This document shows, in pieces, positions 19,540-60,221 of a stretch of 64,000 nucleotides of DNA. The position numbers and the translations under genes are program-made. Where the stretch lies: NCBI RefSeq assembly GCF_021028975.2, contig NC_059439.1, positions 26,598,001 to 26,662,000 of the forward strand, in the 5' to 3' direction. Numbering within the stretch: position 1 is the stretch's first letter; every line of letters starts with the position of its first letter. The notes under the pieces were generated by a model. It was not told where the DNA came from. It saw only the letters and a program-made list of their open reading frames with translations, and did not search any database. The DNA comes from Sphaerodactylus townsendi (Eukaryota).

Positions 19540-22500
19540 TCAGTCGTAATATTTCTCTGCCCGCCGGACCTGGCAGTACATCAGCATGGAGAACACGATG
19601 CCCAAGACCTGGGGAGGAGAGAGCAGGTGGGATCAGAAAAAGGGATGATTGGGGGACAGGGTTCTAATCCTCACCCAGCCCTTCCCTGACCACAGCGCTG
19701 TCCCACGCACCCTGCCCCGACGATAAACCAACTGCGGCAGATTCTGGGTTTCTTAACTAAAGTAAAGTTTAATGTATTGTCGAAAGCTTTCACGGCCGGA
19801 ATCACTGGGGTGCTGTGTGGTTTCTGGGCTGTATGGCTGTGTTCTAGCAGCATTCTCTCCTGACGTTTTGCCTGCATCTGTGGCTGGCTGCATCTGTGGC
19901 ATGATCCTCTGAAGATGCCAGCCACAGATGCAGGCGAAACGCCAGGAGATAATGCTGCTAGAACACGGCCATACAGCCTGGAAACCACAGAGCACCCCAC
20001 TAAAGTAAAGTTTCCCCTTTCAGTTGTGTTCGACCCTGGGGTACCACTGCGAGCAGTGATTTTATAGGCAAGCCTCTTTGTGGGGTAGTTTGCCATTGCT
20101 TTCCCTGGCTATTCTTTACCCCCTAGCTATGAGCTAGGTACTCATTTACCGACCAAGAAATGGATGGATGGCTGAGTTGACCATGAGCCAGCTGCCAGGA
20201 TATCTGACCCACAGGAGGCTTGAACTCCTGACTGTGTGAGTGGCAGTGCAAGCACTTAACCACTACGCCACATGGCTCCTTTCTTAACTAGGCCTTGTTT
20301 ATATGCCACAACCCTTAATCACATTGTACAACGCAGAGTTCCATCCTGGGTACAGAATTCAGAATCTTTGAGAACCGGAGCTTCCGTTTTCCAAAATAAA
20401 GCGAGTTGCCTGTCCTGAAGGCCACGGAGACTGGGTGGACCGAGGCACAGGGCAAAATCGTGGAAATCAGCCGAGTAGGCAACCCGGCCCTCAAAGGCAG
20501 GGTGCCGTGGCCCTCCTTTCTAACTACAAGTTCACGTTTCTAGAGCACCTTTCTGTTTTATAACTAATCCCACGGAGCTTTACCGCCTTCGACTAGAAAC
20601 AGAATGGATTCCGCCAAGATAAGCCGGCCTACGCAAACGCCGCTGAGTTTGCACAAAGCGATTAAAAATGCAACAGCAGCTTTTTTTCACTGCACACAGC
20701 CCCGTCTAGAGCTGTCTTTTTGTAGGAAGCACATGTTCCCTGCTCCCATGTTAAGGGTGGGCAGGGGATGTGTTGTAACAGGGACTTGCTTCGGGTCACC
20801 CAGCCGATCGGATTTCTCCACTTTTGCCTCTCACCTGAACCACGATAATGCAGGCAGCAAAGATGCCCATCGCCGAGATGTTCTGCCCCAGCCAATGTTT
20901 AACTTTCCCGTAACAGGGCTGCAGGGAGTGGAAACACATAAGGGTATCAGAAGAGTTTTGTTGCATGAGACTGAAGGACCATTCAGTTTGCAAGAGAGCC
21001 AGTGAGGTGTAGTGGTTAGGAACAATCGGGGCACACCATTTCATCATGTGGTCGGGTGCCGGCCAGGCACGGGGACCTGGCCAGCACCCGCCCCCGCCCC
21101 CCCCCCAATGCTCACCAGCTGAGCTGATTGCAGGCCAAGATCTCCATTGGGGAGAAAGTTGAGGGTATCGCAGTAAATAAGCACACACAATCTGCATCTT
21201 GAGAATTCCAGTCATAAGCTACTGTGGTATGGTGGTTACAGTGTTAGCAGAGGTGGGATCCAGCAGGTTCTCACAGATTCCCGAGAGTAGGTTACTAATT
21301 ATGTGTGTGTGCCGAGAGCGGGTTACTAATGGGTGATTTTGCCACGTGATTTTGGCCTTCGTGACGCCCCTCCTCTCAGCAGTAGCGCGCAGAACTTGAG
21401 GCAGTCTAGCAGGAGGTGCACCGGCGTGCGTGACAGCCTGCGCCTGCGTGCATTTGTTTCCCGCCCAAGGACCGGCACAGCGGCTGCGTCCCGCCCCCGG
21501 AATGCCCGGCCACGCCCTCGTCGTGCCCCACCCAGCCCCATTGGCGCTACGCCACAGTTTGAATCCCACCACCATGGGAACCTGTTACTAAAATTTTTGG
21601 ATCCCACCACTGAGTGTTAGGCTGCAGTTGGGGAGACACAGGTTCGAATCCCTCGTTTGCCACGCACCTTACTGTGTGACCATGGGCTAGTCACTCTCAG
21701 ACTCACAGTGCAGGGTTGTCGTGAGGAGAAATCGGAGGGGAACGGAACCTACCAGCGACTCCTTTGGAGGAACGGCAGGATTAAAATGCACTGCATAAAG
21801 ACTATGACCCCCAACCTGCAAGCAGTTTTGACCAAGGGTGTTTGAGTGTGTGGACCCTGCTGTTCTGTCCCCATGTAGGGCCAGGAAAGGACCAGAACAG
21901 ATCTTGCCATCAAGGTCCTCCAAAGAATATCATTCAAAATCCGTCCCCCAAGTCCGAGAGTTTTGCAAAAGCACCACCCGCTTCCAACATCTCACCTCTG
22001 GCCACCAACGCTGCGGCTCAGCGCCGTCCGCCTGGCAGTTACTGGGCGGCAAGCAACACGACTCGGGCACCCACGTTCTGTTGTGCACCTCGAACCAGTC
22101 CGTGTAGTTCTGCACCCCACAACAACGAAACTGGGAAGCGAAGGAAAGAGGAGGCAATATCACAAACCAGGCTAGACAACACAGCCAGAAGAAACCTCGG
22201 TCCGTTGTCAAATGCTTTCAGGGCCAGAATCAGCAGGCCGTTTTGGGTTTTCCAGGTTGTGTGGCTGTGGTCTGGCCACGACACCCGGAAAGCCCTCAGC
22301 AGCCAAACCCTGATCCCTTTTTCTGACTGCTCTTCTTCAGCTCTCCACTATGGTGGTGTGTTTGGCCCCTTCCGCACAGGCAGGATAACACACTTTCAAT
22401 CCGCTTTCAAGGCACTTTGCAGGCTGGGTTTTACGGTGCGGAAGAGCAAAATCCACTTGCAAACAATTGTGAAAGTGGATTGAAAGTGCATTATTCTGCC

Positions 22501-60100: not shown

Positions 60101-60221
60101 TATCTGTGGGGTACGAGAGTCGGCTCCCAGCTCTCCCCCTCAACGGAGGAGGCCGCCGCCGCCGCCACCACCCCCCTCCACAACCCCTCACCTCCATGAT
60201 GCAATTTGCAGCCTCCGCCAT
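42127..60221 (-). CDS. PRMT1: Protein arginine N-methyltransferase 1 (one exon frameshifted in this assembly)
   Basis: Exons 60192-60221 ([10 protein letters not shown]), 56271-56324 (alternative), 50087-50184 (98 nt, disrupted), 49814-49969 (VLDVGSGTG), 48579-48642, 47672-47814 ([11 protein letters not shown]), 47416-47503, 46872-46987, 45690-45840, 44192-44313 (THW loop), 42127-42210 (...STDYRMR*). All GT-AG and near-identical to mammalian PRMT1. Confidence 0.95.
42592..42890 (+). mobile_element. Squam3-like SINE in the last PRMT1 intron
   Basis: Family consensus; further copies at 44490-44790, 45134-45420, 46461-46745 (-) and 52948-53235. Confidence 0.85.
43314..43464. mobile_element. PIF/Harbinger-like MITE
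   Basis: TIRs, TSD ACA. Confidence 0.78.
47990..48096. mobile_element. Truncated Penelope-like terminal fragment
   Basis: TCTCCTGACGTTTCGCCTGCATCTG...GAAAGCCTTCGACAATA; related degenerate copy at ~43945-44110. Confidence 0.65.
49029..49176. mobile_element. Near-perfect palindromic hAT MITE
   Basis: Perfect TSD AGCTAGGA. Related copies at 36626-36733, 40492-40611, 42894-43098, 51330-51475, 53625-53761, 54364-54480. Confidence 0.88.
54655..55166 (+). mobile_element. CR1 LINE 3' fragment
   Basis: LEYCVQF...[12 protein letters not shown]; CR1 3' end. Confidence 0.85.
55539..55854. mobile_element. Non-autonomous hAT element
   Basis: TIRs plus perfect TSD GTTTAATC. Confidence 0.88.
56271..56324 (-). 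CDS. PRMT1: PRMT1 alternative cassette exon (v2-type nuclear export signal), [18 protein letters not shown]
   Basis: 54-nt phase-0 exon flanked by tag| and |gtaaat. Matches recalled human exon 2 [18 protein letters not shown]. Confidence 0.9.
58620..58905. mobile_element. Old Penelope-like inverted terminal fragment
   Basis: Degenerate inverted repeat of the same family. Confidence 0.65.
58955..59399. repeat. 53-bp minisatellite, ~8.3 copies, PRMT1 intron 1
   Basis: Unit GGGAGGAAACTGAACCGAGTCAGAAGGGGGTAGTTGTAAAGCAGGGATCCTAT; first unit at ~58955, then 59009, 59062, 59115, 59168, 59221, 59274, 59327. Confidence 0.95.

What the first reader, a model, noticed from the sequence alone, without database searches (positions are those of the whole stretch)
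19540..60221. Tetraspanin-POLR2L-PRMT1 triad: probable retained ancestral paralogon block with a fourth TSPAN4/TSPAN9/CD53 ohnologue
Seen: an intact TSPAN4/9-like gene head-to-head with POLR2L, directly downstream of PRMT1 and next to AKT1S1/TBC1D17. Established: human TSPAN4 is head-to-head with POLR2L on 11p15.5, TSPAN9 neighbours PRMT8 (the PRMT1 paralogue) on 12p13, and the 19q13 PRMT1/AKT1S1/TBC1D17 locus has neither gene. The protein is mosaic: N-terminus RGCLLC...MFVFNLIFW is TSPAN9-like, the following exon LGGCGVLGVG is TSPAN4-like, and TM3/EC2 diverge from both. Inference: this is the pre-duplication TSPAN-POLR2L-PRMT arrangement kept on the PRMT1 paralogon, i.e. a distinct tetraspanin lost in mammals and probably mislabelled TSPAN4-like.
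Basis: partly seen in the sequence, partly recalled or inferred. Interest (0 to 1): 0.78.

Follow-up and report, generated by a model that had tools for sequence, protein, structure and literature searches.

The report
Gecko TSPAN4-like gene beside second POLR2L
This gecko region carries an intact copy of a known "tetraspanin-4-like" gene that mammals lack, paired with a second copy of the RNA polymerase subunit POLR2L next to PRMT1. The layout suggests, without proving, that the pair is a leftover of the early vertebrate genome duplications.

Summary
The gene order is real: TBC1D17(-), AKT1S1(+), an intact 7-exon 241-aa tetraspanin(-), POLR2L(+), PRMT1(-).

- **Not TSPAN4.** In a 62-row ML tree the tetraspanin falls in a separate clade (support 98/97). 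That clade holds chimaera, coelacanth, ray-finned fishes, amphibians, turtle, alligator, tuatara and squamates, with no mammal or bird. Forcing it into TSPAN4 is rejected (AU p 1.8e-51).
- **Separate TSPAN4 exists.** Other geckos (Paroedura, Heteronotia) have a true TSPAN4 on another chromosome.
- **Already described.** This is the "TSPAN4-like" lineage of Huang et al. 2010, who read it as "probably an independent duplicate". RefSeq calls it tetraspanin-4-like.
- **Block is conserved.** PRMT1 – POLR2L – TSPAN4L – AKT1S1 – TBC1D17 recurs in an independent gecko assembly. A cobra has the POLR2L to AKT1S1 part. A turtle has the block with only a POLR2L relic. So it is no misassembly.
- **Two POLR2L genes.** The cobra carries one beside TSPAN4L and one on the chromosome-scale record of the size class on which another snake (Ahaetulla) carries TSPAN4.
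- **Both genes are constrained.** dN/dS is about 0.05 for the tetraspanin and 0.02 or less for POLR2L.
- **Mosaic claim fails.** It rests on differences of one or two residues.

A 2R-ohnologue origin is the best reading (about 0.65-0.7) but is unproven. CD53, amphioxus synteny and this genome's own TSPAN4 could not be tested. The scan had already noted the POLR2L copy on this same window.

The parts
1..9500 (-). 5' part of TBC1D17 (TBC1D15/17-family RabGAP), head to head with AKT1S1. It contains an N run at 8192-8369, which was left untouched.
   Evidence: tblastx of this stretch matches the loci of Paroedura (L001) and Macrochelys (L002). There the called gene has PH_RBD and RabGAP-TBC domains. 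Single exons give no Pfam hit on their own. The name TBC1D17 rests on its position beside AKT1S1, as in human (established knowledge).
10436..17205 (+). AKT1S1 (PRAS40) coding region, from the ATG to the stop codon
   Evidence: Pfam PRAS_NT at 2.1e-29 on 10436-10927. Pfam PRAS on 13398-13835 and on 16990-17202. The FVMDE and RPRLNTSDF motifs are present.
19540..19608 (-). TSPAN4-like exon 7 (22 aa) plus the TGA stop at 19540-19542
   Evidence: AG acceptor, phase 0. Matched in Paroedura, Naja and Macrochelys.
20835..20918 (-). TSPAN4-like exon 6 (28 aa: end of EC2 and start of TM4)
   Evidence: AG/GT splice sites, phase 0
21996..22130 (-). TSPAN4-like exon 5 (45 aa: EC2 with the CCG and PESCC motifs)
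   Evidence: AG/GT splice sites. Pfam Tetraspanin at 2.4e-07 and 31.1 bits, just under the 32.1-bit cut-off.
22530..22631 (-). TSPAN4-like exon 4 (34 aa)
   Evidence: AG/GT splice sites
25107..25181 (-). TSPAN4-like exon 3 (25 aa: TM3)
   Evidence: AG/GT splice sites
26905..27096 (-). TSPAN4-like exon 2 (64 aa: TM1, EC1 and TM2)
   Evidence: AG/GT splice sites. Pfam Tetraspanin at 1.1e-11. This exon was the query for the representative search.
28204..28272 (-). TSPAN4-like exon 1 (23 aa, beginning at the ATG)
   Evidence: GT donor. About one RNA read in each of two of three runs.
33001..34000 (.). CpG island between the divergent tetraspanin and POLR2L genes. It is a candidate shared promoter (inferred).
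   Evidence: CpG observed/expected of 0.82-0.92, against 0.25-0.57 in the flanks. RNA depth shows a small peak of up to about 5 at 33.5-33.9 kb.
36112..36206 (+). POLR2L (RPB10) coding exon 1
   Evidence: Pfam RNA_pol_N at 1.8e-13. Sequence read.
37589..37697 (+). POLR2L coding exon 2, including the stop codon
   Evidence: Pfam RNA_pol_N at 5e-14. Compared with the cobra copy beside TSPAN4L there are 0 nonsynonymous and 28 synonymous differences.
42127..60221 (-). PRMT1, from the ATG (60221) to the stop (42127-42129)
   Evidence: PRMT1-type exon peptides. One exon scores 109 bits against PRMT1 chains and 88 against PRMT8 chains. tblastx matches the called PRMT_C genes of L001 and L002.

Best explanation
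**What it is (shown).** The tetraspanin is the gecko orthologue of the 'TSPAN4-like' (TSPAN4L) lineage. This lineage is the sister of TSPAN4 and spans jawed vertebrates. It was found from chimaera to squamates, but in no mammal or bird record retrieved here.

**What it does (inferred from family membership).** It is a four-pass membrane scaffold with a six-cysteine large extracellular loop, kept under strong purifying selection. It presumably organises membrane microdomains as TSPAN4 does. No assay or expression evidence was obtained here.

**Where it sits (shown).** It is transcribed away from a second, intact and strongly constrained POLR2L (RPB10) gene. A CpG island lies between them and is probably a shared promoter (inferred). 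The pair sits between PRMT1 and AKT1S1/TBC1D17, and this block is conserved in lepidosaurs and a turtle.

**How it arose (inferred, about 0.65-0.7).** An ancestral head-to-head POLR2L-tetraspanin pair lying near a PRMT gene was copied as part of a large block in the early vertebrate genome duplications.
- One copy became POLR2L-TSPAN4 (the human 11p15.5 type).
- A second became POLR2L-TSPAN4L beside PRMT1 (the 19q13 type).
- A third kept TSPAN9 near PRMT8 (the 12p13 type).
- Mammals later lost TSPAN4L and its POLR2L partner.
For: **Gene and protein.**
- The gene model is intact with canonical splice sites.
- The protein is 96.7% identical to RefSeq tetraspanin-4-like of Euleptes and 93.8% to that of Paroedura.
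- It has the N- and C-terminal signatures of the Xenopus and zebrafish 'TSPAN4-like' proteins listed by Huang et al. 2010.

**Phylogeny.**
- In the careful ML tree, TSPAN4L has support 98/97, TSPAN4 98/97 (including sharks and rays) and TSPAN9 99/99. TSPAN4 and TSPAN4L are sisters at 91/84.
- The AU test rejects placing the window protein inside TSPAN4 (delta lnL 139, p 1.8e-51).
- A separate TSPAN4 exists in the geckos Paroedura and Heteronotia and in Pogona, on other chromosome-scale records.

**Synteny.**
- Paroedura: PRMT, POLR2L, tetraspanin, PRAS, RabGAP-TBC, all within 24 kb.
- Macrochelys: PRMT, tetraspanin, PRAS, RabGAP-TBC, with only a POLR2L relic.
- Naja: an uncalled but intact POLR2L, then TSPAN4L, then AKT1S1 on CM019155.1. 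A second POLR2L (I13/A51) lies on CM019148.1.
- Sceloporus: a 67-aa RNA_pol_N gene lies head to head with the annotated TSPAN4 start.
- Callorhinchus: POLR2L, tetraspanin P0185, alpha-adaptin.

**Selection.**
- TSPAN4L: omega 0.05 against Paroedura and 0.06 against Naja.
- POLR2L: omega 0.02 against Paroedura. Against the Naja copy beside TSPAN4L there are 0 nonsynonymous and 28 synonymous differences.

**Literature.** PMC5608299 places TSPAN9 in a block fused to genes just downstream of PRMT8 (human and alligator) and TSPAN11 directly upstream of alligator prmt8. It also reports anole prmt1 on one scaffold with tbc1d17.
Against: - An ancient small-scale or segmental duplication of the POLR2L-TSPAN4 pair predicts the same tree. 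Huang et al. 2010 favoured an 'independent duplicate'.
- CD53 is missing from the tree, so the four-way topology expected from 2R was not tested.
- The block was not seen within 10 kb of TSPAN4L in gar, Pelobates or Astyanax.
- The chimaera protein's place in TSPAN4L is only marginally secured (AU p 0.028). Its POLR2L - tetraspanin - AP2A neighbourhood would also fit a TSPAN4-type locus.
- The V13/S51 residues of this POLR2L are the ancestral metazoan states, as in amphioxus, molluscs, annelids and a sponge. They therefore do not mark a derived paralogue.
- Expression was not shown. RNA reads on exon 1 were close to none.
- This genome's own TSPAN4 and second POLR2L were not seen directly. They are inferred from relatives.
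- The human gene order comes from established knowledge, not from a tool result.
Confidence: 0.7

Rival explanations
1. Ancient small-scale (segmental) duplication. Before jawed vertebrates radiated, but independently of the whole-genome duplications, a short segment holding POLR2L and TSPAN4 was copied and inserted next to PRMT1. On this reading TSPAN4L is an old SSD paralogue, as Huang et al. 2010 proposed, and not an ohnologue.
For: - Huang et al. call it 'probably an independent duplicate of TSPAN4'.
- TSPAN4 and TSPAN4L are sisters (91/84), which fits either model.
- Only two genes, POLR2L and the tetraspanin, are shown here to be duplicated together.
- The block is not seen in gar, frog or characin flanks.
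Against: - The landing site is itself a member of the paralogon. PRMT1 is the paralogue of PRMT8, which lies near TSPAN9 (PMC5608299).
- AP2A1 at 19q13 is paralogous to AP2A2 at 11p15.5 (established knowledge). An alpha-adaptin gene follows the tetraspanin in Callorhinchus.
- A chance insertion into exactly the paralogous region is less parsimonious than block duplication.
Confidence: 0.24
2. It is simply the TSPAN4 orthologue. On this reading the 11p15.5-type POLR2L-TSPAN4 pair was translocated next to PRMT1 in this lineage, and the genome holds no other TSPAN4.
For: - The protein is 59% identical to TSPAN4 and 52% to TSPAN9.
- Some records name the gene tetraspanin-4: Pogona, Zootoca and Protobothrops.
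Against: - The AU test rejects it (p 1.8e-51).
- Paroedura, Heteronotia and Pogona each have a separate true TSPAN4, 97-98% identical to bird TSPAN4 in Paroedura and other squamates, on other chromosome-scale records.
- The cobra has two POLR2L loci.
Confidence: 0.02
3. Assembly artefact: unrelated loci were joined in this assembly.
For: There is one N run in the window, at 8192-8369. It lies inside a TBC1D17 intron, far from the junctions in question.
Against: The same order and orientations are seen in three independent assemblies of other species: Paroedura GCA_049243985.1, Naja GCA_009733165.1 and Macrochelys GCA_033349115.1.
Confidence: 0.01

Closest known systems
'TSPAN4-like' lineage of Huang et al. 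2010 (BMC Evol Biol 10:306; X. tropicalis AAI67361, zebrafish NP_001076276). RefSeq names it 'tetraspanin-4-like'.
   Same: - Same clade (98/97), which includes the X. tropicalis protein (P0170) and a near-identical match of the zebrafish protein (P0203).
- Same N-terminal (SRGCLxC...FNLIFWLGGCG) and C-terminal (FSMLMYCQ..AEKY) signatures.
- Same taxon range: fishes, frogs and reptiles, but not mammals.
   Different: Nothing differs at the level of the gene. What differs is the reading. The paper treats it as an independent small-scale duplicate on a long branch. The synteny found here points to a block (2R-type) duplicate: a second POLR2L, PRMT1, AKT1S1 and TBC1D17.
TSPAN4 (human 11p15.5, head to head with POLR2L)
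   Same: - Same seven-exon, all-phase-0 coding layout in the window gene, and a six-cysteine EC2.
- 59% identity.
- Divergent pairing with a POLR2L gene (for Sceloporus; the human arrangement is established knowledge).
   Different: - A separate clade. Monophyly with TSPAN4 is rejected.
- The window gene lies beside PRMT1 and AKT1S1, not beside CD151 and CHID1.
- Geckos have both genes.
TSPAN9 (human 12p13, near PRMT8)
   Same: - A member of the same ancestral TSPAN4 family.
- It lies near a PRMT1-family gene (PMC5608299).
- 52% identity.
   Different: - A distinct clade (99/99).
- No POLR2L partner is known beside it.
POLR2L / RPB10 (RPABC5), normally treated as a single-copy subunit shared by RNA polymerases I, II and III
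   Same: 67 aa, with both Pfam RNA_pol_N halves. It is identical to the human protein as recalled, except at residues 13 and 51.
   Different: - It is a second locus. The cobra has an I13/A51 copy on one chromosome and a V13/S51 copy beside TSPAN4L on another.
- The window copy keeps the ancestral V13/S51 states.

Membership tests
Tetraspanin superfamily (Pfam PF00335) | Profile match to the tetraspanin domain | tested here: met
   Exon 2 scores 45.3 bits (cut-off 32.1). Exon 5 scores 31.1 bits. Each exon was searched alone. The full-length orthologues all carry PF00335.
Tetraspanin superfamily (Pfam PF00335) | Four transmembrane segments, and a large extracellular loop with CCG and PxxCC motifs plus two further cysteines (type 6a of Huang et al.) | tested here: met
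   Hydrophobic segments lie at about 13-39, 50-81, 80-110 and 200-234. The loop cysteines are at 149/150 (CCG), 171/172 (PESCC), 178 and 193.
TSPAN4-like lineage (Huang et al. 2010, lineage #2) | Falls in one clade with the Xenopus and zebrafish TSPAN4-like proteins, outside TSPAN4 and TSPAN9 | tested here: met
   The clade has support 98/97 and is recovered in 99% of bootstrap trees.
TSPAN4 orthologue group | Monophyly with vertebrate TSPAN4 | tested here: not met
   AU test p 1.8e-51, delta lnL 139.
TSPAN4 orthologue group | Being the only TSPAN4-type gene of the genome | tested here: not met
   Paroedura, Heteronotia and Pogona carry a second, true TSPAN4 on other records. This gecko's own genome could not be searched.
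2R ohnologue of TSPAN4 / TSPAN9 / CD53 | The duplication predates the jawed-vertebrate crown | tested here: met
   The TSPAN4 clade, which excludes TSPAN4L, contains sharks and rays (98/97). The chimaera protein sits in TSPAN4L, but only marginally (AU p 0.028).
2R ohnologue of TSPAN4 / TSPAN9 / CD53 | Lies in a chromosomal block whose other genes are also paralogous to the neighbours of the sister genes | tested here: inconclusive
   - In favour: POLR2L is duplicated with it. PRMT1 is beside it, and PRMT8 lies near TSPAN9. Alpha-adaptin is downstream in Callorhinchus.
- Limits: only 10-kb flanks were visible. Gar, frog and characin flanks show none of these genes.
2R ohnologue of TSPAN4 / TSPAN9 / CD53 | A single pre-duplication gene in invertebrate chordates, with the same neighbours | not tested
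   Huang et al. list one amphioxus TSPAN4.
2R ohnologue of TSPAN4 / TSPAN9 / CD53 | A four-way gene tree compatible with two rounds of duplication, including CD53 | not tested

The most novel reading that the evidence does not exclude
POLR2L and the TSPAN4-family gene were duplicated together as a head-to-head pair in the vertebrate genome duplications. On this reading, many non-mammalian jawed vertebrates keep two functional genes for RPB10, the subunit shared by RNA polymerases I, II and III. The sauropsid block PRMT1 - POLR2L - TSPAN4L would then preserve the pre-duplication gene order from which the human 11p15.5, 12p13 and 19q13 arrangements derive by differential loss.
Probability: 0.55. 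Interest if true: 0.5.

Novelty: already known. Interest (0 to 1): 0.35.

Why it matters
- **Orthology and naming.** Public records call this gene tetraspanin-4, tetraspanin-4-like, tetraspanin-9 or TSN9. Studies of TSPAN4 in fish, frogs or reptiles, for example on migrasomes, can therefore mix two genes that split before jawed vertebrates radiated.
- **Family history.** If the ohnologue reading holds, the TSPAN4 family becomes a full four-member 2R family, with the fourth member lost in mammals. The published 'independent duplicate' reading would then need revising.
- **The POLR2L by-product may matter more.** A second, strongly constrained gene for a subunit common to all three nuclear RNA polymerases raises the question of whether the two copies are redundant or specialised.
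- **Scale.** None of this changes the picture of how tetraspanins or polymerases work. It is an incremental result in comparative genomics.

Tried and rejected
- **RNA evidence.** Three RNA-seq runs labelled with the same species were laid on 28100-34099.
  - Exon 1 had a depth of about 0.6, with a small peak at 33.5-33.9 kb and no supported splice joint to exon 1.
  - The heavy depth at 29-31 kb comes from repeats, with reads only 95-99% alike.
  - The test is inconclusive for expression and for the shared promoter.
- **Flanks in other lineages.** Gar (L004, with 2485 N), Pelobates (L007) and Astyanax (L009) show no PRMT1, POLR2L, AKT1S1 or TBC1D17 within 10 kb.
  - Pelobates has a Kv-type channel upstream.
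  - Astyanax has a Bcl-2-like gene downstream, which is an Atlas lead only (score 0.91).
- **Skate TSPAN4a locus (L005).** No POLR2L within 10 kb.
- **Look-ups that failed.** P0276 (Paroedura TSPAN4 isoform X2) and P0176 (X. laevis TSPAN4L) were not on record.
- **POLR2L word search.** It returned mostly fragments. Clusters at 90% identity merge both copies, so the distribution of the two genes could only be sampled.
- **V13/S51 as a paralogue signature.** Rejected, because these are the ancestral metazoan states.
- **Pfam on single TBC1D17 exons.** No hits.
- **PRMT1 against PRMT8.** The first exon tried did not discriminate (85.7 against 84.2 bits). A second exon did.
- **Ohnologue papers.** PMC8040251 and PMC13450315 do not mention these genes in their main text, and no supplement was held.
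- **Window 60.3-64 kb.** Nothing recognisable, including no BCL2L12-like match.
- **Joined protein model.** The 241-aa model was built only inside scripts, from the window file, for local BLAST, trees and dN/dS. It was never sent to a database tool. Database searches used single exons by reference or protein ids returned by tools.

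
Full report
**1. What is in the window**

Motif scans and six-frame reading show five genes. Pfam confirms three of them: the tetraspanin, POLR2L and AKT1S1.
- TBC1D17: minus strand, 5' part only, below about 9.5 kb.
- AKT1S1: plus strand, 10436-17205, with Pfam PRAS_NT and PRAS.
- A tetraspanin: minus strand, 28272 down to 19540.
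- POLR2L: plus strand, 36112-36206 and 37589-37697, with Pfam RNA_pol_N on both exons.
- PRMT1: minus strand, ATG at 60221, stop at 42127-42129.

The PRMT gene is of the PRMT1 type. One exon scores 109 bits against PRMT1 chains of the PDB and 88 against PRMT8 chains. A more conserved exon did not discriminate.

TBC1D17 is named from two lines of evidence. tblastx matches two loci whose called gene carries PH_RBD and RabGAP-TBC domains. It also lies head to head with AKT1S1, as in human (established knowledge).

**2. The tetraspanin gene**

- It has seven coding exons, all phase 0. Every junction has an AG acceptor and a GT donor. The product is 241 aa and ends at a TGA at 19540-19542.
- It has four hydrophobic segments. 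Its large loop has six cysteines in the CCG ... PESCC ... C ... C pattern.
- The gene and POLR2L point away from each other, with start codons 7.8 kb apart. A CpG island at 33001-34000 (observed/expected 0.82-0.92) lies between them.
- POLR2L and PRMT1 are tail to tail, 4.4 kb apart. AKT1S1 and the tetraspanin are tail to tail, 2.3 kb apart.

**3. How the searches were made**

The joined 241-aa model was built only inside scripts, from the window file. It was used for local BLAST, trees and dN/dS, and was not sent to any database tool.

Database searches used single exons by reference. Exon 2 went to the representative search. This was needed because the word search sees only proteins of 0.55-1.75 times the query's length. 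After that, searches used protein ids returned by the tools. POLR2L exon 2 was searched by reference.

**4. Identity**

The model is 96.7% identical to RefSeq 'tetraspanin-4-like' of the gecko Euleptes europaea. It is 93.8% identical to that of Paroedura picta and 92.5% to that of Gekko japonicus. The window therefore comes from a gecko. It is not Euleptes, and not Eublepharis, which is 92% identical.

The same gene is annotated in many squamates, usually as tetraspanin-4-like. Some records call it tetraspanin-4 (Pogona, Zootoca, Protobothrops) or Tetraspanin-9 (Varanus), and a gar record calls it TSN9.

Huang et al. 2010 (PMC2965184) already list a 'TSPAN4-like' lineage. [quoted passage not shown] Their table gives the Xenopus and zebrafish sequences. 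Those share the window protein's N- and C-terminal signatures. They match proteins P0170 and P0203, the latter nearly identical, which fall in the same clade.

**5. Phylogeny**

A careful ML tree was built from 62 rows and 264 columns with LG+C20+F+G4. The bootstrap had not fully settled (correlation 0.989).

It gives three clean clades:

| Clade | Support | Membership |
|---|---|---|
| TSPAN9 | 99/99 | includes chimaera and sharks |
| TSPAN4 | 98/97 | sharks and rays, ray-finned fishes, frogs, turtle, birds, squamates including two geckos, mammals |
| TSPAN4L | 98/97 | Callorhinchus, Latimeria, bichir, gar, teleosts, frogs, caecilians, salamander, turtle, alligator, tuatara, squamates, the window protein |

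- TSPAN4 and TSPAN4L are sisters (91/84).
- Forcing the window protein into TSPAN4 costs 139 log-likelihood units (AU p 1.8e-51).
- The TSPAN4 clade, which excludes TSPAN4L, already contains cartilaginous fishes. The split therefore predates the jawed-vertebrate crown.
- The chimaera protein's membership of TSPAN4L is only marginally secured (AU p 0.028).
- No mammal or bird appears among the 120 best relatives of the TSPAN4L query. Turtle and alligator do appear. For birds this may reflect missing assembly, not loss.

**6. Is there a separate TSPAN4?**

Yes, in relatives. Paroedura picta has tetraspanin-4 on a 188-Mb record and tetraspanin-4-like on a 31-Mb record. Heteronotia and Pogona likewise have a true TSPAN4. 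In Paroedura and other squamates it is 97-98% identical to bird TSPAN4 over the compared part.

This gecko's own genome could not be searched. The scan's notes hold nothing on TSPAN4, CD151 or CHID1.

**7. Synteny**

| Species (locus) | Gene order seen |
|---|---|
| Paroedura (L001) | PRMT, POLR2L (67 aa), tetraspanin, PRAS, RabGAP-TBC, within 24 kb, same orientations as the window |
| Macrochelys, turtle (L002) | PRMT, tetraspanin, PRAS, RabGAP-TBC; no called POLR2L; a degenerate relic of its last exon |
| Naja naja (L008, CM019155.1) | intact but unannotated POLR2L (V13/S51), head to head with TSPAN4L, then AKT1S1 |
| Naja naja (L006, CM019148.1, 375 Mb) | a second POLR2L (I13/A51); the snake Ahaetulla has TSPAN4 on a 378-Mb record of the same size class |
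| Sceloporus | a 67-aa RNA_pol_N gene 1.5 kb from, and divergent to, the annotated first exon of TSPAN4 |
| Callorhinchus (L003) | POLR2L, tetraspanin P0185, alpha-adaptin |
| Gar, Pelobates, Astyanax | none of these neighbours within 10 kb of TSPAN4L |

Two cautions apply. The Sceloporus TSPAN4 model spans 934 kb and no DNA was returned for it. The look-ups show only 10 kb on each side.

From the literature, Wang et al. 2017 (PMC5608299) report three things:
- Anole prmt1 lies on one scaffold with tbc1d17.
- TSPAN9 lies in a block fused to genes just downstream of PRMT8, in human and alligator.
- TSPAN11 lies directly upstream of alligator prmt8.

They mention no tetraspanin or POLR2L beside PRMT1.

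**8. Are the genes functional?**

Nei-Gojobori estimates:
- TSPAN4L, window against Paroedura: dN 0.029, dS 0.54, omega 0.05. Against Naja, omega is 0.06.
- POLR2L, window against Paroedura: 2 nonsynonymous and 21 synonymous differences, omega 0.02.
- POLR2L, window against the Naja copy beside TSPAN4L: 0 nonsynonymous and 28 synonymous differences.

Both genes are under strong purifying selection.

Direct expression evidence failed. The only RNA runs offered gave about one read on exon 1, and a small peak at 33.5-33.9 kb in the CpG island.

**9. The POLR2L residues**

The two differences from the mammalian protein, V13 and S51, are the states found in amphioxus, molluscs, annelids, a coral and a sponge. 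The window copy is therefore the conservative one. The I13/A51 copy seen in mammals, an owl (A51), Chelydra, a frog, salmonids and the cobra's other locus is the derived one.

It follows that V13/S51 in Callorhinchus says nothing about which paralogue that gene is. S51-type copies also occur in Alligator, Anolis and Chrysemys.

**10. The 'mosaic' claim**

Per-exon identities show no mosaic.

| Region | TSPAN4 | TSPAN9 |
|---|---|---|
| Exon 1 | 12/23 | 14/23 |
| Exon 2 | 45-49/64 | 46/64 |
| EC2 exons (4 + 5) | 22 + 28 | 19 + 15 |
| Whole protein | 59% | 52% |

**11. Interpretation**

Shown:
- This is the known TSPAN4-like lineage. It is distinct from TSPAN4 and old.
- It is functional by the selection test.
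- It sits in a block conserved across lepidosaurs and a turtle.
- In squamates a second POLR2L accompanies it.

Inferred: the POLR2L-tetraspanin pair was duplicated as part of a large block, most simply in the vertebrate genome duplications. The reasons are:
- The neighbours of the three family members are themselves paralogues: PRMT1 and PRMT8, AP2A1 and AP2A2, and the two POLR2L genes.
- The split has the right age.

Not excluded: an ancient segmental duplication that happened to land beside PRMT1. This is the published view.

My estimates are about 0.65-0.7 for the ohnologue reading and about 0.24 for the segmental one. Translocation of the true TSPAN4, and misassembly, are effectively excluded.

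**12. Verdict**

The gene lineage has been in the literature since 2010 and in RefSeq. The advance is a re-reading of its origin, plus the companion POLR2L copy, which another first-stage note on this window (s1-756060) had already flagged. Interest is moderate to low.

The N run at 8192-8369 was left untouched.

Noticed in passing
window 36112-37697 (+); L008 3000-5385 (-); L006 12547-16609 (+): Squamates carry two intron-containing POLR2L (RPB10) genes. In Naja naja a V13/S51 copy lies beside TSPAN4L on CM019155.1 and is not annotated there. An I13/A51 copy lies on CM019148.1. The window copy is of the V13/S51 type and shows 0-2 nonsynonymous against 21-28 synonymous differences between squamates.
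   Followed up: partly
L002 8872-8892 (-) (Macrochelys suwanniensis): Between PRMT1 and TSPAN4L, the turtle has only a degenerate remnant of the last POLR2L exon ([14 protein letters not shown]...), and no gene is called there. This looks like the second POLR2L decaying in that turtle. Chrysemys still shows an S51-type exon 2.
   Followed up: no
window 29000-31000: Repeats between the tetraspanin and the CpG island draw hundreds-fold RNA read depth. The reads are only 95-99% alike and have many loose ends, so they come from transcribed copies of a dispersed repeat elsewhere in the genome and not from this locus.
   Followed up: no
window 6351-6995 (-), 12280-12855 (+), 14777-15331 (-), 16204-16653 (+): Long open frames resembling the C-terminal part of retrotransposon (LINE-type) reverse transcriptases lie inside TBC1D17 and AKT1S1 introns. 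Related frames recur in the skate and cobra loci.
   Followed up: no
L007 1-6517 (-) (Pelobates); L009 21433-28523 (-) (Astyanax): The TSPAN4L neighbours differ outside amniotes. The spadefoot toad has a Kv-type potassium channel (BTB_2 and Ion_trans domains). The characin has a gene with a Bcl-2-like exon (Atlas score 0.91, a lead only). Human KCNC3 and BCL2L12 lie at 19q13.33, which would fit the same paralogon if these identities hold.
   Followed up: partly
public records: The same orthologue is named differently across records: tetraspanin-4-like in most squamates, tetraspanin-4 in Pogona, Zootoca and Protobothrops, Tetraspanin-9 in Varanus, and TSN9 or tetraspanin-9-like in gar and some teleosts. 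The Naja model (P0002) is mis-spliced: it has junk at the N-terminus and skips exons 4-6.
   Followed up: partly
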